Counted from the first letter of the stretch, positions 7,246-21,396 are shown. The stretch is 64,000 nt of DNA from Lytechinus pictus (GCF_037042905.1 NC_087247.1:60760001-60824000); one strand, 5' to 3'. Notes: generated by a model from the letters alone, not told the origin. A program made the numbers and translations.

Positions 7246-7615
7246 TATAGGACCCAAACAATTTAATATGATTCCTCAAGTAATAAGTATAACTAATTCA
7301 CATGTTTTACTTTCCTTTAGAAAGCAGTATTAAAGTATTGCTAGACAAGTAAAGCTTTATTAATTTTCAGAGCTAATGTAAATGCATTACCTGTGCCACA
7401 TATACCTTTAATTTAATCTAGTCATGCTAGTAGGATTTTTCTTCCTTTGTTGAATTTATTACTGATAGGTGATTTTGTGTTTTATTATTGTTGTTATTTA
7501 ATATTTTGTTTCGCTGTGTTTTGGCGATCCGGCACCTCATGTTTCGTATAACCTTCGTGGAAAGCTAAGCAAATAATTTGGCATTGATTGATATTTCAAA
7601 GTTGTTTTTATCTTA

Positions 7616-10600
7616 TAGTCCAGTAGATATGTGAAAAGGATGCTCGAATCTGGCAGAAAGTGTGAAATTTGGCACACAGGGGTATTTTTGGGCGCTGATT
7701 TCAAAAATTGCCGGCCCCAAGCGATTTGACCTTCGGGTCGGCCGCCATTTTGAAATCCAAGATGGCCGCCATGAAAAATCATTAAATGTCATTTTCTTGA
7801 GTTTTACATGGCATGTTATACTGAAATTTGGCATATAGGGGTATTTTGAGGCACTGATTTCAAATATTGCCGGCCCCCAGCAATTTGACAATTTGGCCGG
7901 CGGCTAAATGGCCGCCATCTTGGAATCCAAGATGGCCGCCATGATATATTATTGCAATCATTTTCTCGAGTTTTATATGAACTGCGGTATTGAAATTTGG
8001 CATATAGGCTTAATTTGGGGTGCTGATTTCAAATATTGCCAGCCCCAAGTGATTTGACCATCGGGTCGGCCGCCATTTTGAAATCCAAGATGGCCGCCAT
8101 GAGAAATCTTTAATGTCATTTTCATGAGTTTTACATGACGTGTGACACTGAAATTTGGCATATAGGGGTATTTTTAGGCACTGATTACAAATATTGCCGG
8201 CCCCCAGCAATTTGACAATTTGGCCGGCGGCTAAATGGCCGCCATGAAAAATCATTAAATGTCATTTTCTTGAGTTTTACATGATAGGCGACACTGAAAT
8301 TTGGCATATAGGGGTATTTTGAGGCACTGATGTCAAATATTGCCGGCCTCCAGCAATTTGACCTCCAGGTCAGCAGCAAAACGGCCGCCATCTTAAAATC
8401 CAAGATGGCCGCCATGAAAGATAATTTGCTCAAGTCTTACGTATGGCCTGTAACACTTTAAATTTGGAAAAAAACTTGATCTTTGCATCCTTGATCAATG
8501 AAAAGAACATAGTAAATAGATGCTATTTTGAATTCCAATATGGTTACCAAGTTTGAATGATGTTCAACATTATAATGGTGAGTAAAACCCATTGCATTGG
8601 CACTGAAAACAAATCCAACACAACCACATCTTTGTCCGTTGCAAGGAATTTGGCATCCTTAATTGCTGATATAGATGTTACGTAAGTATGAAGCACCATA
8701 GATACACAAACCAGCTAGCTTCTTCTGCAGTTACACATTTGAAGTGGCTTTGGTTGAATAATAACCATCCAGAACAATCATTTTCTGTTGAGAGGCTTTA
8801 AATTATTTCTTTGAGTTTTATATGATCTGCATTATTGCACTTTGACAAATCGACGGAGTGTGGGGTGCTTATTTCAAATATTGCTGGCCCTCAGCGATCT
8901 GATCCCGAGTCAGAGGCAAAATGTCAGCCATCTTGAAATCCAAGATGGCTGCCATGAAAAAAGATCATTGAAAAAAAATCACTTTATCTAGTATCACGTA
9001 ACGTATTATTTTAAAGTTTGGCACCTAGGGATATTGAAATTGCCCCCAGTAATCTGTCCAACAGATATGCTGCAAAATGGCCACCATCTTGAAATCTAGA
9101 GAGGGTAGACTGTCATGAAAATTCATTAAAATCATTTTCTTGGTTTTAAACAATTTGAGGCACTGCATTTTAGAAATACAGGCAGGATTTTGGCCCGCTT
9201 GTTTTAGAATATTGCTCCAATAATTGCAATATTTTATTACAAATCAACATGAAGAAAACTGCTCCAGACTTGAAGTACTGATGGTTATATAGTAGTATGA
9301 TGATGATGATGATGATGAAATGAAATTAATATTAATAATGGATGATAAAAATACATATTTTATTGTTCAAAATAGAATTCAGTAACAGAAATGCTCCGAA
9401 AATTTATTTTGCCCATACCCTGTAGATCGTGAGCCCGGCAGCAACTTAGCAGCGCGACATCGGACGTTGCTCTATCCTTTAAAAAGGGAGTTCACCCCAG
9501 AGAAAAGTTTGTTGTAAAAACAAAAGAAAATATGATATAAAAAAGATATTGGTGGATCCATCAAAGATATTAGAATTTTAAGTTTTTGATTTGTGACGTC
9601 ATATAGGCTACTGTACGAGCAGCTTTCCCATTATGTTGTGTGATATAAAATGCATAAATGGTTCATCGTGGGTATTTTTTTTTCTTTCTGGAGCGGGTGT
9701 GAAATCATTAGTTTGTTGATATACTGAGGGTCCAATAAAAAAACATTTTCATTTTTTGAGGAGGCTACATTTCATTGATTTTTGTACTTTAAGAAACATG
9801 GGGGAACTGCTTGAATCTGACGTCTCAAATGCACCAAATGAAATTCCAATAGCTTTTTAAATATTTGATGGAATTTCCTCAAACCTTCAATATTTTTTTT
9901 CATTATTTATTCTGTTATTGTTTCAATAAACTTTTTGTCAGGTTGAACTTCCTCTTTAATTCGTTGACCGCCAAACAGGTTAGAAGCAGCTCCCCTTTTC
10001 TAACATCTTTTGGTCTGATGCTGTCGGAGCTTGAACTCCCGATCTCCCGATTGTGAGGCGAACATGCTCCCATTGTCAGATTGTCGAACACACGATGGTT
10101 ATTCAAAAATGCCAAATTTCAAAATAATACCTACATTATAATTATGATACTTGATTTTTTTTTATGATTTTTTTATGGCAGCCATCTTTGATTTCAAGAT
10201 GGCTGCCATAAATTGGATGAACATTACTGGATTCGAAAGAAGTCTATGGAGATCACAGGAAAATCTCAGTTGTGGGCGATGCCGTCGAACTTAACACACG
10301 TGTAGAAAGCAACTCGGACGCCAAAAGAAAGCTTATTTTCTTTTCTTTTGACTGATGATACATATGTTTACTCACCATTGTAATGTTGAACATCATTCAA
10401 ACTTGGTAACCATATTGGAATTCAAAATAGCATCTATTTACTATGTTCTTTTCATTGATCAAGGATGCAAAGATCAAGTTTTTTCCAAATTTAAAGTGTT
10501 ACAGGCCATACGTAAGACTTGAGCAAATTATCTTTCAAGGCGGCCATCTTGGATTTTAAGATGGCGGCTGTTTTGCTGCTGACCTGGAGGTCAAATTGCT

Positions 10601-11698
10601 GGGGGCCGGCAATATTTGACATCAGTGCCTCAAAATACCCCTATATGCCAAATTTCAGTGTCGCCTATCATGTAAAACTCAAGAAAATGACATTTAATGA
10701 TTTTTCATGGCGGCCATCTTGGATTTCAAAATGGCGGCCATTTAGCCGCCGACCAAATTGTCAAATTGCTGGGGGCCGGCAATATTTGTAATCAGTGCCT
10801 AAAAATACCCCTATATGCCAAATTTCAGTGTCACACGTCATGTAAAACTCATGAAAATGACATTAAAGATTTCTCATGGCGGCCATCTTGGATTTCAAAA
10901 TGGCGGCCGACCCGATGGTCAAATCACTTGGGGCTGGCAATATTTGAAATCAGCACCCCAAATTAAGCCTATATGCCAAATTTCAATACCGCAGTTCATA
11001 TAAAACTCGAGAAAATGATTGCAATAATATATCATGGCGGCCATCTTGGATTTCAAGATGGCGGCCATTTTGCCGCCGGCCAAATGGTCAAATTGCTGGG
11101 GGCTGGCAATATTTGAAATCAGTGCCTCAAAATACCCCTATATGCCAAATTTCAGTGTCACATGCCATGTTAAACTCAAGAAAATGACATTTAATGATTT
11201 TTCATGGCGGCCATCTTGGATTTCAAAATGGCGGCCGACCCGATGGTCAAATCACTTGGGGCCGGCAATATTTGAAATCAGCAACCCGAATTAAGCCTAT
11301 ATGCCAAATTTCAATACCGCAGTTCATATAAAACTCGAAAAAATGATTGCAATAATATATCATGGCGGCCATCTTGGATTTTAAGATGGCGGCCATTTTG
11401 CCGCCGGCCAAATGGTCAAATTGCTGGGGGCCGGCAATATTTGAAATCAGTGCCTCAAAATACCCCTATATGCCAAATTTCAGTGTTACATGCCATGTAA
11501 AACTCAAGAAAATGACATTTAATGATTTTTCATGGCGGCCATCTTGGATTTCAAAATGGCGGCCGACCCGATGGTCAAATCGCTTGGGGCCGGCAATTTT
11601 TGAAATCAGCGCCCAAAAATACCCCTGTATGCCCATTTTTACACTTTCTGCCAGATCCGAGCATCTTGGCCATTTTTTGTCACATAACCGCTCCACTA
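7616..11698. mobile_element. Foldback-type non-autonomous DNA transposon (Academ-like) with long modular inverted arms
   Basis: TTA|TAGT ... ACTA|TTA (3-bp TSD). Arms about 7616-8585 and 10366-11698 are reverse complements built of about 328-bp units rich in GGCGGCCATCTTG / CAAAATGGCGGCC. The superfamily call rests on TAG termini and the 3-bp TSD. Confidence 0.8.
9483..9955. mobile_element. Kolobok-like MITE nested in the foldback spacer
   Basis: TTAA|aaagggagttcacc ... ggttgaacttcctct|TTAA. Confidence 0.65.
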
Positions 11699-13482
11699 TT
11701 ATTGCTGAATAAAGAAATAAAGATTTAAAGAAAGATGAATATATTGTATACCTTTGATGATACAGAAGTTAATCCAGAATTTAATTATGGAATCCAATCA
11801 CACAGTTTTGAAAGTCAATTATTTTTTTCCTTTAGTCGGTTTAAACTGACTGATAGAATATCATATTCAACATGAAATGAAAAATAGATTACATCAGATC
11901 ATTGAAAACGAAGTACACGTTAGTCTGATTAATCAACCAACACTCTATCATGCTAGACGAATATGACGATTTTTCAAGGATACGTTTCAGACAGCCGGAT
12001 CTTGTCTTCCAAAAAGGCAATGATTAGAGATCTTTGCATGGAAAGTATAGAGCTATATTTTTCATAATTTCAAAATATTTGCCTCCATGGTTTTAAACTT
12101 TGTTGCATTTCATTTCTTGTGAAAAGTTTTCGGCAAAGTCTTTGGCTCTTATTTATCTTTTTTTCCATTTAATTCATTAATTGGCGTCATTTCAGAATTT
12201 AGATACGTATAAAAAAATCGACAATACACCTTGTTTTTTCTTTCGTGTCCGACATCTACATAGATCAACTATAGATATTTGACCATGACTTGTCACATCG
12301 CAGATCTCTTGTACGTTTATTTTTAGAGTTTATGCGCAAGTGAATACATTCTTAAATAGTTATTCAAATATTGTGAAAAGCTTGTCCTCAATGCACACAA
12401 TAAGGAAAGTTTTAATACTTTGACCCCATCCTGTTCAAATATGTCTCGGGATATGTCTGCATCCTGATGAAGCAAATGAAAATTTCCCGGTGAAAGATCA
12501 TAATGATAATATTTTGCTAATATCAGCTAGGATCAGCACAAAGTCCTCATAAGCGCTTTACAAAAATATTACAAGCCAGGTTATTGAAATACTGCATTTT
12601 CTCCATTTTATGGGGAGCATTACAACAAGAATGTCAATTTTCGCTTTCGCATCCTTCTGGATACCAATAAACCAGTTTGACATTTGGGTGAAGAGTGGCA
12701 AAGCAGGGAAATGGAAGGGTCCCTCGGTAGAATTTCTAAAGATATTTACGTAATATCTAGTTTATGTTATGAATATGTATTACAAAATTTTGTCAATAAA
12801 ACAAGAATTATATTGTGCACACTTTGTTATTCTCTTTACAATGGTTGCATGCTATGTTATTATTTTGTTATATTTCTTTGTGGAAATGAAATCAATGCCA
12901 ATCTTAATTTGAATATTGATAAAAAAAGGTCGCGATGCAGTTCGACCTCTGATTACAAGGCAAACTTTTTACTTTATTTTAACGTATGTTCTGCTAATTC
13001 TCGACTTCAATATGAATGGCATAAAATGTGTGTGTAATATATGCTTCATCTCATTTTGTTTACTATCCATTTCAAACAAGATAAAATACATCTGTTTGTG
13101 TTGTACATCACGAAAACCAAGTATCAAACAGTGCTTTTATATTTAATATAAACAATTCATAACTAGATTCTCGAAAGAATCATCAGTATCTCCCCTTTTC
13201 ATCAATGTTTGTTACCCCATCAAGACAAATAGAAATCGAAATACCAGTCGGAAATGTATAGTCATTCCGTATACACTCGAAACTCGATGATAATGATGAA
13301 AATCCATTCATTCTCTATAATGACGTAATGAGTTATATTGATTTTATACATGACGTTACAAGAATATCTACCCTGAACAAAAGAAAATACTACGTCATTG
13401 TTGACCAAGACTGACAAAATGACGTAATATGTACATCTTGATTAATTCATCAATAAGTTGTTTATACTTTATTTTTTTTCAG

Positions 13483-13547
13483 GTTGCGGGGACTGTAGGC
13501 TGTGTAAGACATATGTGAGAGCTTGCGATGCGTGTTATTTTGGAATA
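13483..13547 (+). CDS. Internal exon of a putative small Cys-rich peptide precursor (xCGDCRLCKTYVRACDACYFGI)
   Basis: tttattttttttttcag acceptor, gtaagt donor, 65 nt, phase 1-0, 5 Cys in 21 codons. Confidence 0.68.
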
Positions 13548-14785
13548 GTAAGTTTTACTCCTTCTATGTTTATATAAATGGCATAGACCCTATACGATAT
13601 TTCACATTAGGTCTATATCAAATAAGCATGATTGAACAAATGTATCCATTGATTAATACATTAATGTATATAAATCGTCATGTGTATCTCGGTTTATTCT
13701 TTCGCATAATCCCGGCTAAAGCCATGGTAAATTGTAAAAAAAAAAGTGAATTGTACTTGAGTATCATCGACATGTAACGTGTCAATCTTCAAATGAGAAT
13801 GAAACCTTGGGAGAAATTTAACTTGTGTGAAAACAGAATAATCAAAGGTAAGAGAAAAATTGTACAAATAATACGAAAATTGTGAGCATTTGAATGTTGA
13901 CATCACTATCGATGTGGACATTCCCTATTGGCAATGTAATTAAATGTGTGATATCACACTTGTACAACTTCCCTATTACTTTTCTACATATTTTATTTAT
14001 TGATTATTACTTGTATCAAATCAATCCATAAATCAGGATTTTTTCATGGGAGGATATTTAATAGAGGTTCAATAAAATACATCATGGACAAAGAGTTTGT
14101 ACTATCATATAAAATGAGGAAAATAGATGTTTAGGGGTATATTACAAAGGGGAGAGTTATACTTCTGTGATCTTGGTCGCATTGCCAAAGGAAGGATTTC
14201 CATAACTTTAGTGATTTAGAATTTTAGATACCCATAATTCTATGGTTTGTCCAATCGTTCTCAAACTTTATTCTATGGTTTCTATGTTTTCATACAAACT
14301 AACTTGTTCCTATTCTCCTTTAAGAAGTGTAGTCATGGTAGAAGCAATTGATTTTTTTCTACCCCCAATTCTACAGAGAAAAAAAAATCGAATATTCGAT
14401 TCTTATATAATAACCTAGCTCCTTCACAGATTTTATATCACAAAGGAAAAACAAACAAAAAGACGTAGGTTATTTGGATCGGTCACCCGATTGAAATCAA
14501 TTTTTAACGTGAAATGGAAATTAAATGTATTGTAGGAAATACAATAACGTTTCATTTCCTCCACATGGCTTTTTGGGGGGTTTGCACATTTTAATGTAGC
14601 AATGAATTGGAATAGTGATAAACGCATTTCTGCGGATTTATCAAAACTAAAGACAGGCTTTAAATCTTTCTATATTGTCTCTAGACCGATCAGAAACCCA
14701 TGGGCAATGATGTAGAGATAGGAGAGGGGGCTTAAGCCAACCACCTTCTGTCTTCTGTGTATGACACGTTATTTTGACTTCATGT

Positions 14786-14788
<3 letters not shown>

Positions 14789-14838
<50 letters not shown>
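14789..14838. repeat. (TA)n microsatellite
   Basis: direct inspection. Confidence 0.95.
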
Positions 14839-14842
<4 letters not shown>

Positions 14843-14891
14843 TATTTTCTCTTTTCATTTTCTCTTTTCATGATATTTTATATCTTGCTAG

Positions 14892-15056
14892 GCAACGCGA
14901 AAAAGGAATTCATTGATAGAAGCAGCAGACAATGATGGAACAAATGAGCTACAGAGGGCAGCATTACAGACGTCTATTACCGCCAAAAGGCCAACCTGTT
15001 ATCTTGATCAGATATTCAGCAAACTCCCACCTGAAATACAACGCCAGATTGAAGAA
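14892..15056 (+). CDS. Next exon of the same gene (ATRKRNSLIEAADNDG...AKRPTCYLDQIFSKLPPEIQRQIEE)
   Basis: Pyrimidine tract plus tag, gtgagt donor, 165 nt. The phase-0 frame is the only open one, and it is GC-richer than the flanks. Confidence 0.7.
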
Positions 15057-15289
15057 GTGAGTTAGACACACCTTCTTTAGCCCCTCTCCCTCTCACCTTA
15101 ACCCCCCCCCCCTCTCTCTCCCTTTCCTCCCCGCTTTACTCTCCCTCTCGCTATCCACAGAAGTTCCATCATGAATTTATTCAAGTCCTAGACATTGATG
15201 ATGGTTTAAACAAACAAAAAATTGTTTGATTTGCCAAGTTCCTATGACTTCGTGTATTCCATAAATGTCTCAAAATATCCTTTTTCAGA

Positions 15290-17116
15290 TGTGATGGTCA
15301 AAACGTAGGCCTAGATCAGCTAGCGCTGCGCGCTCGCACTTTGATTGATGAGTTATGTATACCTCTTTATCAATTCTATAACAAGCTACTTAAAATCTCA
15401 TTTTCATTACAGATTATAAAACAAAAATCGGCTCGCGATTTGCGTTTGCATCAATGTTAAAATGTATTAACCCATGCGTCCTATTCATAACTACAAAATG
15501 CTTAAAATGTCCCGTTTTCAAGCCTTAATAATCAACAAATTCCACGCTCTCATCAAGCATATTAGATTAATAAATAAGAAAACAATGAATTCCTAATAAC
15601 TATAATGGCCCCTTTTCAGAGTGGAATATTGACAAGATTCATCTCGCTCTTAGGAATAATTTGAAGATATAGTCATAATTTTCATATATGATGACAAAAT
15701 GTGCTTAGAATGTCCCGGTCCTAGGTCAAAATAAAAATTAAAAAATAATATCAGCTGGCGCATCGCGCTCGCATCATTTATCAAGTGTGATCACGGACCT
15801 CTATACTAATAGGTCCATGGTGTGATCCACATCTACTTCCAAATTTTCCTACACAGTGCTTAAATTGACCCCCTTAAAATTTTTTTTTTAGATCAGAATG
15901 TATTTTTTTCAGCTCGCGGCATTATTGATCTTTATGGGTAAAAATGTATACAGAATGTCCAGATTCTAGGTCTAAATCTAAAGCAGGCGCACGGATGTTT
16001 ATCGATATAGGCAGCTTGTTTTTTTTATTTAAAACGTGCTTAAATTATCCAGTTTCTGATCGGAATATCAATAATTTCCTGCTGGCGCTTCACGCTCGCA
16101 TTATTAATGTAGGAAGATACCCAATTACCCATCATTTTCATGATTTACAAAACATGAATAGAGTGTCCCGCTTTTAGGTCTAAAATCTAAATTTTCTTCT
16201 GCTCGCGCTCGCATTAATTGTTTACATTCCCTTCCCTATTCATGATTACGAAATGTGCTTAGAATGACATTTTTTTTTAGGTCGGAATGTCCAAAATTTC
16301 AGCTCGCGCTTCGCGCTCGAATTATTTAATTGTTGAAATATGTATCATCTTTTTTCATGGGTAACTGCAAACTGTCCTCAACAGGTTTTCGATCAGGCCA
16401 GAACGTTTATTAACAAGAGTGTCGCTAAGGGGAGCACATAATACGCCCGTCTGTAACGCGGAAAAGGAGCTATTGGCCAAGCAAGAAAAGTGGAAGATGG
16501 TGACTGAACCTTTGACCTTCTGACCTCAAAATCAATAGAATTGTTAGGATATATACTAGTATCATACATAAAATTCAAATAAAGTTATCACATTAACAAG
16601 GACTTCGGAAGGGTAAGATGAAAACATGTCACTGTGATCTTGACCTTTGACCTTTTGACCTCAAAATCAATAGGCTTCCTGGGATCCATGCTAGTATCAT
16701 ACACACCAAATTATATGAGCATAGGTAAAGTTAAACTGAAGTTATCGCGTTTACAAGGAAAAGTTAACGGACGGACGGACAGACAGACCGGCGGACGGAC
16801 GGACACCGAGCGTGATACCATAATACGTCCCGTCGAGACGGGCGTATAGAAATGTCTGCTCGCGCTTGGCGTTCGCGGTCCCAAACATTGCCTAGAATGT
16901 TAGATTTTCAGGACAAAATGCATGAAAGTTAAAAAAAAAATTAGCTCGCACTTCGCACTTTTTATATAGGGCTAATATGAGATTATTTCACATTTCTGTT
17001 TTTTATAAGAATAAAGCTAAGAAGTAACTGTGAGGACTACCCCTTCCAAAATAAAATCAGCTTTGAGCGGCCGATCGGCCCCACCCCCTATTGGCGAAAG
17101 TTGGATCCGCCCCTGT
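15290..17116 (+). repeat. Degenerate roughly 120-bp tandem repeat (gctcgcgcttcgcgctcgcatt core) ending in a ggatccgcccctg MITE-type terminus
   Basis: Core motif recurs at about 15318, 15430, 15752, 15910, 16080, 16200, 16301, 16857 and 16943. Confidence 0.7.
16412..16848. mobile_element. Helentron-associated (DINE-1/Tsp-like) non-autonomous element
   Basis: aacaag start; subterminal ataatacgcccgtc with partner gacgggcgtat; TGACCTTTGACC core repeats; (GACG/GACA)n; terminal stem-loop. Confidence 0.72.
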
Positions 17117-18030
17117 GACACACACACCAAACACACAGAAAAAAATGTTGCCCCCCATTAAAAAGCAATGACCCACAGTGCCCCCAGGGAAAAAAAAGTC
17201 ATAGCTACGCCACNNNNNNNNNNNNNNNNNNNNNNNNNNNNNNNNNNNNNNNNNNNNNNNNNNNNNNNNNNNNNNNNNNNNNNNNNNNNNNNNNNNNNNN
17301 NNNNNNNNNNNNNNNNNNNNNNNNNNNNNNNNNNNNNNNNNNNNNNNNNNNNNNNNNNNNNNNNNNNNNNNNNNNNNNNNNNNNNNNNNNNNNNNNNNNN
17401 NNNNNNNNNNNNNNNNNNNNNNNNNNCATGGGGAATCGGGGATTAAATGTAAACTCTCTTCGGTTTTAAAGACTACTACAGGGGCCGCGGAACCGGGGGG
17501 CTGGGGGGCTTCAGCCCCCCCCCCCCCCCCACTTTTTCCAAAACCGTGTTCAAAAACGTAAAAATGACCATATGATTGTGATTTTTAGCATGGTCATGTT
17601 TTTTATAAGAATAAAGCTAAGAAGTAACTGTGAGGACTACCCCTTCCAAAATAAAATCAGCTTTGAGCGGCCGATCGGCCCCCCCCCCCCCTATTGGCGA
17701 AAGTTGGATCCGCCCCTGTGACACACACACCAAACACACAGAAAAAAATGTTGCCCCCCCATTAAAAAGCAATGACCCACAGTGCCCCCAGGAAAAAAAA
17801 GTCATAGCTACGCCACNNNNNNNNNNNNNNNNNNNNNNNNNNNNNNNNNNNNNNNNNNNNNNNNNNNNNNNNNNNNNNNNNNNNNNNNNNNNNNNNNNNN
17901 NNNNNNNNNNNNNNNNNNNNNNNNNNNNNNNNNNNNNNNNNNNNNNNNNNNNNNNNNNNNNNNNNNNNNNNNNNNNNNNNNNNNNNNNCGGGGATTAAAT
18001 GTAAACTCTCTTCGGTTTTAAAGACTACTA

Positions 18031-18207
18031 CAGGGGCCGCGGAACCGGGGGGCTGGGGGGCTTCAGCCCCCCCCCCCCCCACTTTTTCCAAAACCGTGTT
18101 CAAAAACGTAAAAATGACCATATGATTGTGATTTTTAGCATGGTCAGCCCCCCACTTTTGGCTCAGCCCCCCCCCCCCCCACTTTGAAAACCGTCCCGCG
18201 GCCCCTG
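18031..18207. mobile_element. Short G/C-run MITE (caggggccgcgg TIRs)
   Basis: caggggccgcgg...ccgcggcccctg; partial copy from 17479. Confidence 0.7.
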
Positions 18208-18884
18208 TACTATATAGTAGAAGTAGTAGTAGTAGTAGTAGTAGAAGTAGTAGTATGGCAAGTTCCCCCAAGTCGCGCAGTCCCCCTTGTCTGCGCACAC
18301 GCGTATCTGCGCGATTCTATATCTAGTAAAAGAAGAACGAGCACGAACTTTACACATGCAATATATAGACAGGTATTCATAAAAAACTCTGACTCAAAAT
18401 GGTGGACAAATAATGAATTTAGGGCATTTCATGTGACGGCCTGAAAATGCAGCCTTTCTCATCAAAATTCCCGAATCGTGTGCAAAGTGAATGAGTGTGC
18501 AGACATGGGGTACCATTTTTTTTTCAATCTGAAAATGAATGCCCGAGGTTTTTTCAAGAAAATTCTATATTTTCTTTCATTTTTTTAATGAGAAATTCGG
18601 TACACTTACTCTTAATGATATAAGGAACATTATTAATAGAAAGATTTTCTGAAATAAGAAGAAATTCATGTTAAATCTTAATTCAAATTGTTAGGTGCGC
18701 AGACTTGGGGCCCACCATCATAGTAGAGTTGTTCATTATATTTTATTGGTATTTTAATTACTGCTGATATGCTTCTGCCATTTCATTAAGAGTTTATAAA
18801 TTTCAATATTGAAACAAAAAATTCAGATATATCGCGAATTCGGAATGTCATTGATGTTGAATAATTTTTTGTATTCCTTTTCAG

Positions 18885-18905
18885 CTTATTTTATCATCGA
18901 TTTGA
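18885..18905 (+). CDS. Candidate last coding exon of the peptide gene (LILSSI*)
   Basis: gtattccttttcag acceptor; phase 0 continues the amphipathic helix to TGA; AATAAA at 19990 and about 20021. Confidence 0.5.
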   Translation, partial: LILSSI

Positions 18906-21396
18906 GATTGAAAGAAGATCCAGAAGGACTCATTTTTTTCTACTGCTGATTGTTTGATGAAGTTTTAAGGGACAAAGAATACATGGATTTTATGACAAAG
19001 GCCAATCAGGAGATTACAATATTCTTCTTCCCATCGATTCTTCGCCAGTTTTACATTACAAATCACATTATTAAGAGGTAACGTCTTTCTTCGATTGCTT
19101 TCTGTTCGTCAGATCATTTTCGGGTGCAATTCATAATCATTTTATTTCTATTAGTTTTAAGTATTGTAAGGAGTGTAAATCAATCTAATTAATTTCATTG
19201 TTGGAATGAAATGAATGAATCCGAGGGTGCTAAAGATTAAATAGTAGCGTTACCAGCATCTGCAAATGATCAAGCATTCAGGAAGATTTGTTTCATGACC
19301 AATTATACACATTTCATGTACTTGAATCTGGACTTTTCCACGATATGGGATGCACATATAAAAATGTGATATATGAAATTGTATTTCTGATTCGACTCTA
19401 ACAAGGAATGCAAAGACATTTTCTGATGTGCTACTGTTTTTTGGATATTTATTTTCCTTTTAAAAGGATAACCAACTCGATAACTGCGTATAGATTTTCA
19501 AGTGATCTTGGGGAAAGGAATAGGGTTCTGTACTTATCAAACCTATGAATGTGATTTTAAGATGAAGATCAGAATATAGATAATCAGGATGAATATTAGT
19601 GTAACCTACATTCCAAATTCCCTATTTATAATCGATCCAAAGAATTGCGACTATATAGTGATTAGTGACAAAGCCACATTTACATTTAAATATAATTTAC
19701 TGTATACAATACAATGTAGCGTTTTGTTTTCTTGTGACAAGTACACTTGTGATAGAGTAAACATTATCATAAGCCCCAATTATTTTTTAGATATCAATAT
19801 GTACCAATATTGTGAACAGTACGTTTGTATTGTATGTCGAATGATTTCATTTAAATGATTAATGTTGACTACTCATACCAATGTCCATTATTGTGTTCGT
19901 CACTTGGTATAGTGATTCTCAATACTTTGATGGCATGGACAAATTGGTTATTGTATTATATGAAAAATGGTCTCATTAATGTTTGTGACAATAAAAATCC
20001 CACCCACACGCACAAAAACCAATAAAATCCCTCTGTATTTTAACAGGTAAATTATATAAACTTCTCTATAATGTTTAATATTCAGACTGAAATAGTCATT
20101 ATGAACTCATGGGCATTGGCGAATTCGTATAATTCATGTATTCATTATTTCTGAGGTATGAAATGTTGTGTGTACTATATGATATGTAAAAACCAACGGA
20201 TTAGACATAAAAACATCTAGCTATGTATACATGATACAGAAAGTTGATGCTGAAGTTACATCAATGAATCAGACTCTAATCCGACCGATGGAACGTCATT
20301 TTGAATCACGTATAGCTTTGATCGATTATTGATGTGACTCCAACATCAATAAGATGAGGAATGTTCTTATTCTATCCTTTTTATAGAAAAGGTGGTTCAG
20401 ATTTTAAAGCTATTTTATTCCTCAAACATATTAATGCTCTCGATTTATATCAATTTTCTCAATTCCATATTCCATATCGATTCCAGTTTGATATTGTTCT
20501 ATTACGGGGTATCGAAGTTTCTATTCAAAAGGAGGCATATAGTTAGCGACTTGTTCATGCTTTAAATCTGATCACCAGTGAGTTCAGTTTTGATAAACCA
20601 GGAACGTGGAAGACCATGCGATAAACTTACTGCAACACTGGTAATCAATGTTAACCTTCTTTTGGGGACCCAAATGTGCAAATATTCATTTTTTTTTCAT
20701 CGTTTAAGTGTAAATCATGATTACTTTGAAGTAAAGAAAGTGGTCAGGGAGAGAGAGAGAGAGAGCGAGGGATGTGGATAATCTTAGGACGCTATTGGGG
20801 GCATTCTACCTGTTCAAGTTCAGTGCCCCTTACAAATTCATGAATGGGCTTGCTAACACAAATATCAAGTTTATAGTACTACGCTAGGAAGACAATCCTA
20901 AATAAATAGATTTGAGAGAGAAACATACAAGAAAATACCTTTTATACCACTATGTCTATAATGCGTGCGAAAAAAAACCTATAAAAATACATTTTAACAT
21001 TAGGTCTATAATTTGGCAGTGAAAATTCTAAAAGCTGATATTTCGGAACATTGTGTACCAAAGCTTGATGTAGTATAAAATGTAGCATACATTGATCCAT
21101 GTTTGTTTAATTTTAGTATCACATCGAAAACAAAATAATCCAACTTCATACCTGGACTTCGTATGATAAAAACACCAATAAATGAGAATATGTAGATCGG
21201 TCGAAATCAGATACTCCATTATGAATCATAACAGTTTTCCAGCAGACAATAAAATCGAAAGGTATATAATTTCCAGACACAACGCCTACAATTTGACCTA
21301 TACGGTTAAAGGCTTTACGCGTGATTTTCCCGGGAGGCGAGAATACATGAGAGGGAACTGGTAATCCATGGAGTATCTAGAGGTGAGAAGAAGTTA

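What the first reader, a model, noticed from the sequence alone, without database searches (positions are those of the whole stretch)
13483..18905. Hidden three-exon gene for a Cys-rich, dibasic-cleaved peptide precursor
Seen: three plus-strand exons, each under 60 codons and so absent from the ORF track, with strong splice sites and matching phases. They join to x-CGDCRLCKTYVRACDACYFGI-ATRKR-NSLIEAADNDGTNELQRAALQTSITA-KR-PTCYLDQIFSKLPPEIQRQIEE-LILSSI*. Established: a Cys-rich peptide followed by RKR/KR convertase sites and an acidic spacer is typical of neuropeptide, toxin and antimicrobial precursors. The C-x2-C-x2-C-x6-C-x2-C spacing does not match any family I can name confidently (not trissin, eclosion hormone or defensin spacing). 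Inference: an uncharacterised secreted signalling or defence peptide. A sixth Cys and the signal peptide would lie in an upstream exon that I could not locate; the split first codon could itself be T|GT.
Basis: partly seen in the sequence, partly recalled or inferred. Interest (0 to 1): 0.75.

Follow-up and report, generated by a model that had tools for sequence, protein, structure and literature searches.

The report
Orphan sea-urchin secreted Cys-rich peptide gene
The three small exons are real, spliced and expressed. Together with a signal-peptide exon 22 kb upstream they encode a 116-residue secreted, cysteine-rich pro-peptide that two sea-urchin species share, that databases list only as "uncharacterized", and that belongs to no known peptide family.

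Summary
Observation confirmed. RNA-seq reads and transcript contigs from four runs join 13547 to 14892 and 15056 to 18885, both GT..AG. Both assembly gaps lie inside the second of these introns and do not touch the coding sequence.

The gene is already in RefSeq as an uncharacterized protein. In Lytechinus pictus it is LOC129255445 (110 aa, 100% identical over the three exons). In Strongylocentrotus purpuratus it is LOC105438197 (118 aa).

I found the orthologous exon in L. pictus 8.7 kb before the window start, 22.1 kb upstream of 13483. It has a Kozak ATG, a GTGAGT donor and the matching phase. The split codon is A|GT (Ser), not T|GT.

The conserved product is signal peptide, a 29-aa six-Cys cationic peptide, RKR, an acidic spacer, KR, and a 28-aa C-terminal peptide. 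All seven Cys and both basic sites are conserved. dN/dS is 0.31, lowest (0.12) in the C-terminal peptide.

No known family fits: not orexin-type, CXXC, F-box or any Pfam family. The L. pictus RefSeq model uses a non-conserved alternative 5' exon (11963-12044) that lacks a signal peptide. Which 5' exon L. pictus transcripts use was not tested. Function is inferred, not shown.

The parts
13483..13547 (+). 'gt' completes the split codon A|GT (Ser); then CGDCRLCKTYVRACDACYFGI, which holds five of the six Cys of the N-terminal peptide.
   Evidence: Sequence. Joint 13547/14892 in contigs and raw RNA reads. 100% match to XP_054749774.1. Single copy in the genome. Orthologous exon L011:32953-33017 in S. 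purpuratus.
14892..15056 (+). AT (14892-14897) ends the Cys peptide. RKR is at 14898-14906, the acidic spacer NSLIEAADNDGTNELQRAALQTSITA at 14907-14984, KR at 14985-14990, and the first 22 residues of the C-terminal peptide (PTCYLDQIFSKLPPEIQRQIEE) at 14991-15056.
   Evidence: Sequence. Both flanking joints in RNA. Single copy. 85% identical to S. purpuratus. Orthologous exon L011:34341-34511.
18885..18905 (+). Coding start of the last exon: LILSSI plus TGA stop (18903-18905).
   Evidence: Sequence. Joint 15056/18885 in RNA. Conserved as LILSTV-stop in S. purpuratus.
18906..19150 (+). 3' UTR, a continuation of the last exon. Transcript contigs run 1265 nt further, to about 20415 if colinear.
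   Evidence: Contig pieces in X1 and X2 cover 18885-19150 without a break and continue beyond it (table 8). The first 250 nt of the 3' UTR are about 70% identical to S. purpuratus.
11963..12044 (+). Alternative 5' coding segment used by the L. pictus RefSeq model (MTIFQGYVSDSRILSSKKAMIRDLCME + A|GT). It has no signal peptide. The donor is A|GTATAG at 12044/12045. If the exon is internal, a good acceptor at 11834/11835 would make it 11836-12044 (209 nt).
   Evidence: N-terminus of XP_054749774.1 maps here. An in-frame TAG ends at 11956. Inserting it between the signal-peptide exon and 13483 stops the frame after 37 codons. No blastn match in the S. purpuratus locus. Single copy. Its use in RNA was not tested here.
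15057..18884 (+). Intron 3 (3828 nt). It holds both assembly gaps (17214-17426, 17817-17988), a duplicated roughly 600-nt repeat unit around them, and dispersed repeats with very high RNA contig depth.
   Evidence: Sequence. Depth table and the GT..AG joint that skips it. The S. purpuratus counterpart is 1151 nt.
13548..14891 (+). Intron 2 (1344 nt), with a (TA)n microsatellite at about 14790-14840, just before the acceptor.
   Evidence: Sequence. Joint that skips 1344 nt. The S. purpuratus counterpart is 1323 nt.

Best explanation
This is a real, expressed, single-copy sea-urchin gene with four coding exons. It makes a 116-residue secreted pre-pro-protein.

The first coding exon lies outside the window at G000:C3:60751253-60751352, which is 8.7 kb before the window start and 22.1 kb upstream of 13483. 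It encodes a 28-residue signal peptide (cleavage predicted after AQA) and the first residues, GCKIR, of the mature chain.

The three exons in the window add the rest:
- a 29-residue cationic peptide with six Cys (GCKIRSCGDCRLCKTYVRACDACYFGIAT; spacing C-x4-C-x2-C-x2-C-x6-C-x2-C);
- an RKR site;
- a 26-residue acidic spacer;
- a KR site;
- a highly conserved 28-residue C-terminal peptide with a seventh Cys and a predicted helix-turn-helix (PTCYLDQIFSKLPPEIQRQIEELILSSI).

Most likely mechanism (inferred): the protein enters the secretory pathway, the six Cys form three disulfides, and prohormone-convertase-type enzymes cut at RKR and perhaps at KR. This would release a disulfide-rich peptide and a C-terminal peptide that act as extracellular signals, of neuropeptide or peptide-hormone type.

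Shown: exon structure, splicing, expression, conservation, purifying selection, and a signal peptide in the ortholog and in the genome. Inferred: cleavage, disulfide pairing, signalling role.
For: - Splicing and expression: both joints appear in raw RNA-seq reads and in contigs from four runs in three studies. About 10% of the sampled words of 13400-15100 are held by 18 RNA-like runs from five studies; the two exons make up about 13% of that stretch.
- Orthologs: an exhaustive HMMER search of 1.84 billion representatives with exon 14892-15056 gave XP_054749774.1 (L. pictus, 100%) and XP_030828757.1 (S. purpuratus, 85%) as the only real hits.
- Signal peptide: the S. purpuratus N-terminus has a basic n-region, a 12-residue window with mean Kyte-Doolittle hydropathy of 2.4, and A-x-A before the cut. 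The L. pictus exon is 85% identical, with gccATGG and a GTGAGT donor in phase 1.
- The region around that exon, including about 350 nt upstream of it, is 77% identical between the species.
- Gene structure is conserved: introns are 22130/1344/3828 nt in L. pictus and 22852/1323/1151 nt in S. purpuratus.
- All seven Cys, RKR and KR are invariant. Indels occur only in the spacer.
- Nei-Gojobori dN/dS is 0.31 overall, 0.35 for the Cys peptide, 0.56 for the spacer and 0.12 for the C-terminal peptide, with dS 0.30.
- Charge pattern: +3 for the Cys peptide, -3 for the spacer, -2 for the C-terminal peptide.
- The nearest clusters in the ESM Atlas feature search are nearly all neuropeptide precursors (NPS, CCAP, GnRH, CCHamide, corazonin, neuromedin B, galanin). 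With the signal peptide removed, the only two clusters listed were NPS and spexin.
Against: - No peptide has been detected, and no tissue or cell type is known.
- The ESM Atlas scores are only 0.75-0.82, a range that shuffled proteins reach a third of the time.
- There is no amidation Gly.
- The second site is KR followed by Pro. From general knowledge of convertase specificity this is a poor P1' residue, so the C-terminal part may stay attached to the spacer.
- An odd number of Cys (seven) in the mature chain is unusual.
- The only L. pictus RefSeq model starts in a different exon and has no signal peptide.
- Expression is low: a few junction reads per 13 million reads sampled from each run.
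- Homologs are known from only two echinoid species.
Confidence: 0.6

Rival explanations
1. Host-defence (antimicrobial) peptide precursor. A cationic disulfide-rich peptide is made with an anionic C-terminal extension that neutralises it until cleavage, as in mussel mytilin and myticin precursors (comparison from general knowledge).
For: The layout is signal peptide, then a +3 six-Cys 29-mer, then a dibasic site, then an acidic remainder of -3 and -2. No neuropeptide family matches.
Against: The gene is single-copy, with no paralogs. Purifying rather than diversifying selection acts on the Cys peptide (omega 0.35). The supposed pro-piece is the most conserved part (omega 0.12). The Cys spacing is unlike what I recall for strongylocins, centrocins or defensins; this was not tested by alignment. 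ESM Atlas neighbours are neuropeptide precursors, not antimicrobial peptides.
Confidence: 0.13
2. A small secreted protein that is not cut at the basic sites. The 88-residue mature chain would work whole, for example as an extracellular binding, matrix or gamete protein. The Cys-rich head and the conserved C-terminal helix would be two modules of one protein, and the seventh Cys would form a dimer.
For: KR-Pro is a poor convertase site (general knowledge). Seven Cys suggests an intermolecular disulfide. The C-terminal segment is the most constrained part. It also resembles LP-turn protein-binding motifs, although below threshold: 2EXR E=0.04, a REV1 chain E=1.2, and repeats in P0004.
Against: The tribasic RKR and the KR are both invariant while the stretch between them takes indels and evolves fastest. 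That is the pattern of a spacer between two products.
Confidence: 0.17
3. In L. pictus the locus mainly yields the RefSeq isoform. The lineage-specific exon 11836-12044 is either the first exon or a cassette exon, so translation starts at 11963 and gives a 110-aa protein without a signal peptide. That product would be cytosolic, or the transcript would be an unproductive substrate for nonsense-mediated decay. On this reading the secreted form is minor or lost in this species.
For: XP_054749774.1 is the only L. pictus protein for this gene in the 5.8-billion-protein collection. Its N-terminus maps to 11963-12044, which has a usable donor and a good upstream acceptor. The 259 and 355 nt that the contigs carry upstream of 13483 would fit exon B (209 nt) plus part of exon A as well as they fit exon A alone.
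Against: The exon has no counterpart in the S. purpuratus locus. The signal-peptide exon is intact in L. pictus, with Kozak context, a consensus donor, a conserved upstream region and omega 0.39. That would not be expected if it were unused. Six tightly spaced Cys make little sense in a cytosolic 110-mer.
Confidence: 0.08
4. A fragment of an intracellular zinc-finger/F-box-type protein. This was my own first guess, from the CXXC-like Cys pattern and the LPPEIxxxI motif.
For: A weak zf-CXXC hit on exon 13483-13547 (E=0.36, 11.3 bits against a cut-off of 26.5). An F-box-like LPPEIQRQI at the end of exon 14892-15056.
Against: The ORF ends six codons after that motif, in transcripts and in both species. 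No downstream F-box continuation exists on the + strand. No Pfam family reaches its cut-off. The ortholog has a signal peptide.
Confidence: 0.02

Closest known systems
Ambulacrarian orexin-type neuropeptide precursors (echinoderm OX1/OX2; Semmens et al. 2016, PMC4772807; Zandawala et al. 2017, PMC5627052)
   Same: Both are small precursors of about 90-160 aa. In both, a roughly 30-37-residue peptide with six Cys follows the signal peptide directly and ends at a dibasic site, and the remainder of the precursor is acidic. They share a local skeleton of C-x6-C-x5-G-[IL] just before the cleavage site. For comparison, L. pictus OX1 reads ...CKILEIRCRDPTIGIQYYG-KR, OX2 reads ...CPLKMSFCGDPSRGLQIVG-KK, and this gene reads ...CKTYVRACDACYFGIAT-RKR.
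   Different: Orexin-type peptides of eleutherozoans start with adjacent CC, have the spacing CC-x5-C-x5-C-x-C-x6-C, and end in Gly for amidation (PMC4772807, PMC9793003). This peptide has C-x4-C-x2-C-x2-C-x6-C-x2-C and no Gly. BLASTP against both L. pictus orexin-type ORFs gives E of about 0.8. Those genes lie on another chromosome-scale contig, C1. In them the signal peptide and peptide sit in one open frame, whereas here they are split over three exons.
Echinoderm orphan Cys-containing precursors Spnp11/Arnp11 and Spnp15/Arnp15 (PMC4772807)
   Same: They are echinoderm-restricted, about 100-110 aa long, and have a signal peptide, one dibasic site, an acidic spacer and a six-Cys polypeptide of unknown function.
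   Different: In those precursors the six-Cys polypeptide is 47-57 residues long and lies at the C-terminus, after the acidic spacer. Here it is 29 residues long and lies at the N-terminus. Motif searches in the supplements of three echinoderm neuropeptide papers found none of this gene's motifs.
RefSeq models LOC129255445 (L. pictus, XP_054749774.1) and LOC105438197 (S. purpuratus, XP_030828757.1 / XP_011664014.1)
   Same: These are the same gene. The three window exons are 100% identical to the L. pictus model. The S. purpuratus model has the full four-exon coding structure.
   Different: Both are named only 'uncharacterized protein', and no paper in the searchable library cites either id. 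The L. pictus model has a non-conserved N-terminus without a signal peptide. The conserved 116-aa form proposed here is not in the collection.

Membership tests
Orexin-type neuropeptide precursor (ambulacrarian form) | Six-Cys peptide directly after the signal peptide, followed by a dibasic site | tested here: met
   The signal peptide ends ...YAQA. GCKIRSCGDC...GIAT and RKR follow.
Orexin-type neuropeptide precursor (ambulacrarian form) | Adjacent CC at the start and spacing CC-x5-C-x5-C-x-C-x6-C (eleutherozoans) | tested here: not met
   The spacing here is C-x4-C-x2-C-x2-C-x6-C-x2-C. L. pictus OX1 and OX2 and the ophiuroid sequences show the canonical spacing.
Orexin-type neuropeptide precursor (ambulacrarian form) | C-terminal Gly (amidation signal) before the dibasic site | tested here: not met
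   The peptide ends ...GIAT-RKR in both species, with no Gly at the end. OX1 and OX2 end ...YYG-KR and ...IVG-KK.
Orexin-type neuropeptide precursor (ambulacrarian form) | Detectable sequence similarity to orexin-type precursors of the same genome | tested here: not met
   BLASTP gives E=0.79 and 0.81. The loci are separate, C1 versus C3.
Orexin-type neuropeptide precursor (ambulacrarian form) | Activates an orexin/allatotropin-type receptor | not testable with these tools
   Needs a receptor assay.
Generic neuropeptide / peptide-hormone precursor | N-terminal signal peptide | tested here: met
   Present in S. purpuratus and in the L. pictus genomic exon at L003:1253-1352. Judged by hydropathy and the -3/-1 rule, because no SignalP tool was available. 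Use of this exon in L. pictus RNA was not tested.
Generic neuropeptide / peptide-hormone precursor | Conserved mono- or dibasic cleavage sites flanking conserved peptides, with less conserved spacers | tested here: met
   RKR and KR are invariant. The spacer has both indels and the highest omega, 0.56, against 0.35 and 0.12 for the flanking peptides.
Generic neuropeptide / peptide-hormone precursor | Processed peptides present in nervous or endocrine tissue | not testable with these tools
   Needs peptidomics and in situ hybridisation. The tissues of the runs are coded and not visible.
CXXC zinc finger (PF02008) | Pfam match above the gathering score; eight Cys in two CGxCxxC clusters | tested here: not met
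   E=0.36, 11.3 bits against a cut-off of 26.5. Only one CGxCxxC is present.
F-box (PF00646 / PF12937) | A roughly 45-residue three-helix motif starting at LPxE | tested here: not met
   Only LPPEIQRQIEELILSSI is present, then a stop. No F-box hit in Pfam. No continuation exon was found.
Cationic Cys-rich antimicrobial peptide with an anionic extension (mytilin/myticin-like layout) | Cationic Cys-rich mature peptide followed by an anionic pro-region | tested here: met
   Net charges are +3, then -3 and -2.
Cationic Cys-rich antimicrobial peptide with an anionic extension (mytilin/myticin-like layout) | Multigene family with fast or diversifying evolution of the mature peptide | tested here: not met
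   Single copy. Omega is 0.35.

The most novel reading that the evidence does not exclude
This gene founds an unrecognised echinoid, and perhaps echinoderm, neuropeptide or peptide-hormone family. It would yield two products: a three-disulfide 29-mer and a conserved helical 28-mer. The more daring version is that it is a very divergent third paralogue of the ambulacrarian six-Cys orexin-type peptides. It keeps their C-x6-C-x5-G-[IL] core and their position next to the signal peptide, but has lost the CC pair and the amidation signal.
Probability: 0.35. Interest if true: 0.6.

Novelty: new member of a known kind. Interest (0 to 1): 0.4.

Why it matters
Catalogues of echinoderm neuropeptides are used to reconstruct how bilaterian peptide signalling evolved. 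They were built mostly by similarity and by repeat-motif mining, so small single-copy Cys-rich precursors like this one are easily missed. Here a conserved, expressed candidate is defined with its full exon structure.

The L. pictus RefSeq protein probably has the wrong N-terminus for the conserved, secreted product. That matters because L. pictus is now a genetic model in which the gene could be knocked out.

In S. purpuratus the first exon is duplicated, giving two isoforms that differ by two residues at the N-terminus of the mature peptide. This is a small natural experiment on which residues matter.

If the gene is not a signalling peptide, it is still a clean example of an orphan secreted protein that has been kept since these two urchin families separated (roughly tens of millions of years, from general knowledge).

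Tried and rejected
- **F-box / zinc-finger idea.** This was my first reading. A scan of + strand open frames from 15 to 45 kb found no F-box continuation. Pfam found nothing above cut-off. The full ORF then ended the idea.
- **De novo search for the upstream exon inside the window.** I looked for an ATG, an open frame and a phase-1 donor. Nothing convincing turned up, because the true exon is outside the window.
- **Bacterial promoter/terminator scan.** Irrelevant for a eukaryote; a wasted call.
- **Word-based search of 5.8 billion proteins with the S. purpuratus protein.** Only the two known models were returned.
- **Other hits of the exhaustive search (P0003-P0005).** These are repeat proteins. 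P0004 carries many copies of an L-x-x-IFSALPPELKKE motif, and P0003 gives no pairwise alignment. I treat them as motif-level or compositional matches, not homologs.
- **AlphaFold2 on the three-sequence alignment.** Mean pLDDT 44.8, pTM 0.22. This is too poor for any fold search, so none was run. The ESM Atlas's own model is also poor and its structural neighbours are meaningless.
- **PDB sequence search.** Nothing below E=0.1.
- **Literature.** Neither LOC id nor an 11-residue string of the peptide occurs in the library. Motif searches in the supplements of three echinoderm neuropeptide papers were blank. The S. purpuratus orexin sequences themselves could not be retrieved, so I used ophiuroid sequences from a supplement to locate the L. 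pictus orexin genes instead.
- **Exact-protein look-ups of P0001 and P0002.** Nothing on record. P0006 gave the S. purpuratus locus.

Full report
**1. What is in the sequence**

The window is AT-rich eukaryotic DNA, about 34% GC. It comes from an 812-Mb assembly and sits at G000:C3:60760001-60824000. The 100% match of the exons to a Lytechinus pictus RefSeq protein agrees with that.

- 13483-13547 follows a T-rich tract plus AG and is followed by GTAAGT.
- 14892-15056 follows AG and is followed by GTGAGT.
- 18885 follows ttttcag and gives six codons and then TGA.

At the window's stop frequency (0.064 per codon), 76 open codons across the first two exons have a chance probability of about 0.007.

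**2. The assembly gaps**

Both N runs (17214-17426 and 17817-17988) lie inside the 15057-18884 intron. They sit within a duplicated repeat unit. RNA reads and contigs join 15056 directly to 18885, so exon order, strand and frame are independent of the gaps. I did not try to fill them.

**3. RNA evidence**

Eighteen RNA-like runs from five studies hold about 10% of the sampled words of 13400-15100. The two exons make up about 13% of that stretch.

I laid two contig runs and two raw RNA-seq runs on 13250-19150:
- Joint 13547/14892 (GT..AG): one contig each in X1 and X2, and 5 and 9 raw reads.
- Joint 15056/18885 (GT..AG): the same contigs, and 4 and 11 raw reads.
- One 2020-nt contig carries the three exons consecutively. 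It has 259 nt further 5' and 1265 nt further 3'. So the last exon continues as a long 3' UTR, and at least one more exon lies upstream of 13250.

Depth is low, so the gene is weakly expressed in these samples. At 13490 the transcripts of X2, X19 and X20 carry T instead of G, a synonymous GGG-to-GGT change.

**4. Identity**

I ran an exhaustive HMMER search of 1.84 billion cluster representatives with the 55 residues of exon 14892-15056. It gave two real hits:
- XP_054749774.1, "uncharacterized protein LOC129255445 [Lytechinus pictus]", 110 aa, 100% identical.
- XP_030828757.1 (and XP_011664014.1), [quoted passage not shown], 118 aa, 85% identical over the exon and 79% over 87 residues.

The other three hits are repeat proteins that match a short motif or by composition. 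A word-based search of 5.8 billion proteins added nothing. All exons are single-copy in the genome. Neither LOC id, nor a string of the peptide, occurs in the searchable literature.

**5. The missing 5' exon**

The S. purpuratus protein begins MGVDGLRAMIASTITLFLLIMCFTYAQA|GCKIRS-CGDC....

A tBLASTn of that N-terminus against the window and the 20 kb upstream of it found one match, 85% identical, at L003:1253-1354. That is G000:C3:60751253 onward, 8.7 kb before the window start. The exon has gccATGG at the start. It ends ...AAA ATA AGA A|GTGAGT, which is phase 1 and complements the 'gt' that opens exon 13483 to give AGT = Ser.

Joining it to the three window exons gives a 351-nt ORF of 116 codons plus stop:

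MGVDGLRAMITTTITTFFIIMCFTYAQA / GCKIRSCGDCRLCKTYVRACDACYFGIAT / RKR / NSLIEAADNDGTNELQRAALQTSITA / KR / PTCYLDQIFSKLPPEIQRQIEELILSSI.

**6. The RefSeq N-terminus in L. pictus**

XP_054749774.1 instead begins MTIFQGYVSDSRILSSKKAMIRDLCMES. That sequence maps to window 11963-12044, with donor A|GTATAG. This segment:
- has no hydrophobic core (best 12-residue hydropathy 0.57, against 1.96 for the exon-A form);
- has an in-frame TAG just upstream of its ATG;
- would be a 209-nt exon if spliced at the good acceptor at 11834/11835;
- would then stop the exon-A frame after 37 codons;
- has no blastn counterpart in the S. purpuratus locus.

By contrast, the region around exon A, including about 350 nt upstream of it, is 77% identical between the species. 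I therefore read 11836-12044 as a lineage-specific alternative or poison exon, or an alternative first exon, and the 116-aa form as the conserved product.

Which form dominates in L. pictus RNA is not tested.

**7. Comparison with the S. purpuratus locus**

The locus (L011, from GCA_000002235.4) has the same four coding exons. Introns are 22852/1323/1151 nt, against 22130/1344/3828 nt in L. pictus. In S. purpuratus the first exon is duplicated 6.6 kb apart. The two RefSeq isoforms differ only in GCKIRS versus GCEITS. L. pictus has one copy.

Nei-Gojobori estimates between the species:

| Region | dN/dS |
|---|---|
| Whole CDS (dS 0.30, dN 0.093) | 0.31 |
| Signal peptide | 0.39 |
| Cys peptide + RKR | 0.35 |
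| Spacer | 0.56 |
| KR + C-terminal peptide | 0.12 |

The counts are small (about 43 substitutions), so the per-segment values are indicative only.

All seven Cys, RKR and KR are invariant, and both indels fall in the spacer. Introns next to the exons are only about 52-61% identical over alignable columns. The exons are roughly 76-86% identical and the first 250 nt of the 3' UTR about 70%.

**8. What it is not**

- *Pfam.* No family reaches its cut-off. The hits are zf-CXXC E=0.36, Chlam_OMP3 E=0.02 (Cys bias) and 2EXR E=0.04 on the LPPEI motif.
- *PDB.* No chain matches below E=0.1.
- *AlphaFold2.* Mean pLDDT 44.8.
- *Orexin-type.* Echinoderm orexin-type precursors are the nearest known layout: a six-Cys peptide right after the signal peptide, then a dibasic site (PMC4772807, PMC6586643, PMC9793003). 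I located the two L. pictus orexin-type genes on contig C1, using ophiuroid sequences from a paper's supplement. They read CC-x5-C-x5-C-x-C-x6-C-x5-G[IL]xxxG-K[RK]. The present peptide shares only the C-x6-C-x5-G-I tail. It lacks the CC pair and the amidation Gly, and BLASTP gives E of about 0.8. It is not a member on any tested criterion. A very remote relationship cannot be excluded.
- *Spnp11/Arnp11 and Spnp15/Arnp15.* These orphan precursors carry longer Cys-rich polypeptides at the C-terminus.
- *F-box / zinc finger.* My initial idea fails because the ORF ends six codons after the motif and the protein has a signal peptide.

**9. What it most likely does**

The protein is small and has a signal peptide. 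Invariant basic sites bracket a fast-evolving acidic spacer between two conserved peptides. That is the anatomy of a prohormone or neuropeptide precursor.

The ESM Atlas feature search independently puts it nearest to neuropeptide precursors. Its neighbours are NPS, CCAP, GnRH, CCHamide, corazonin, neuromedin B, galanin and spexin, but at scores of 0.75-0.82, which are leads only.

Single-copy status and purifying selection argue against a typical antimicrobial peptide. The charge layout (+3 / -3 / -2) would still suit one.

Two features warn that processing may be partial or that the protein dimerises. One is the Pro after KR. The other is the seventh Cys in the strongly constrained C-terminal segment.

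I put about 0.6 on a secreted, processed signalling-type peptide precursor. The remainder is split between an uncleaved secreted protein, a defence peptide, and a mainly non-secretory isoform in L. pictus.

**10. Verdict**

The gene is already modelled in RefSeq but is unnamed and unstudied, and the L. pictus model probably misses the conserved signal-peptide exon. It is a new, family-less member of a known kind, of moderate interest.

Noticed in passing
L011:10001-10100 and L011:16581-16680 (S. purpuratus locus): The signal-peptide exon is duplicated 6.6 kb apart in S. purpuratus. The two alternative first exons give isoforms that differ only at two residues of the mature peptide's N-terminus (GCKIRS versus GCEITS, a charge change of +2 to -1). 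L. pictus has a single copy.
   Followed up: partly
window 11836-12044: The L. pictus RefSeq protein XP_054749774.1 takes its N-terminus from this exon, which is not conserved and has no signal peptide. If the exon is spliced between the conserved first exon and 13483, it introduces a stop after 37 codons. This is a possible poison exon or an annotation artefact.
   Followed up: partly
window 16000-18800: The intron carries dispersed repeats whose copies reach word depths in the thousands in RNA contigs. A roughly 600-nt unit is duplicated around both assembly gaps (16990-17213 resembles 17590-17816; 17427-17590 resembles 17989-18140). There are long C/G homopolymer runs next to the gaps.
   Followed up: no
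window 7500-11730: A large inverted arrangement of a tandemly repeated unit that gives open frames on both strands (MAAILDFKMAAI..., HGGHLGFQNGG...). The minus-oriented copies lie at 7.5-8.7 kb and the plus-oriented copies at 10.3-11.7 kb. It is probably a transposable or satellite-like element inside the 22-kb first intron.
   Followed up: no
window 14790-14840: A (TA)n microsatellite of about 50 nt lies about 50 nt upstream of the acceptor of exon 14892. Read laying skipped it as a repeat.
   Followed up: no
window 42000-64000, minus strand: A long series of CUB-domain exons (motifs such as CGG...SPNYP). This is the cubilin-like gene noted by earlier readers. Its 3' end faces the 3' end of the peptide gene.
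   Followed up: no
G000:C1:25817621-25817740 (L008) and G000:C1:10794982-10795113 (L006): The two orexin-type precursor genes of L. pictus. Each has the signal peptide and the six-Cys peptide in one open frame: DRACCRRTEGCNLRTDCTCKILEIRCRDPTIGIQYYG-KR and QSPCCRRAKGCSFPPGCSCPLKMSFCGDPSRGLQIVG-KK.
   Followed up: partly
window 14991-15056 + 18885-18902: The conserved C-terminal peptide (L-D-Q-I-F-S-K-L-P-P-E-I-Q-R-Q-I-E-E-L) resembles the Leu-Pro-turn helical motifs of intracellular proteins (F-box start, 2EXR, ubiquitin-binding motif of REV1). It also resembles a motif repeated many times in the unrelated protein P0004. All matches are below threshold, so this is probably convergence.
   Followed up: partly
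window 13490: Transcripts of runs X2, X19 and X20 read T where the assembly has G. This is a synonymous Gly codon change. Several indels in the 3' UTR at 18922-18933 also differ between runs. These are allelic variants.
   Followed up: no
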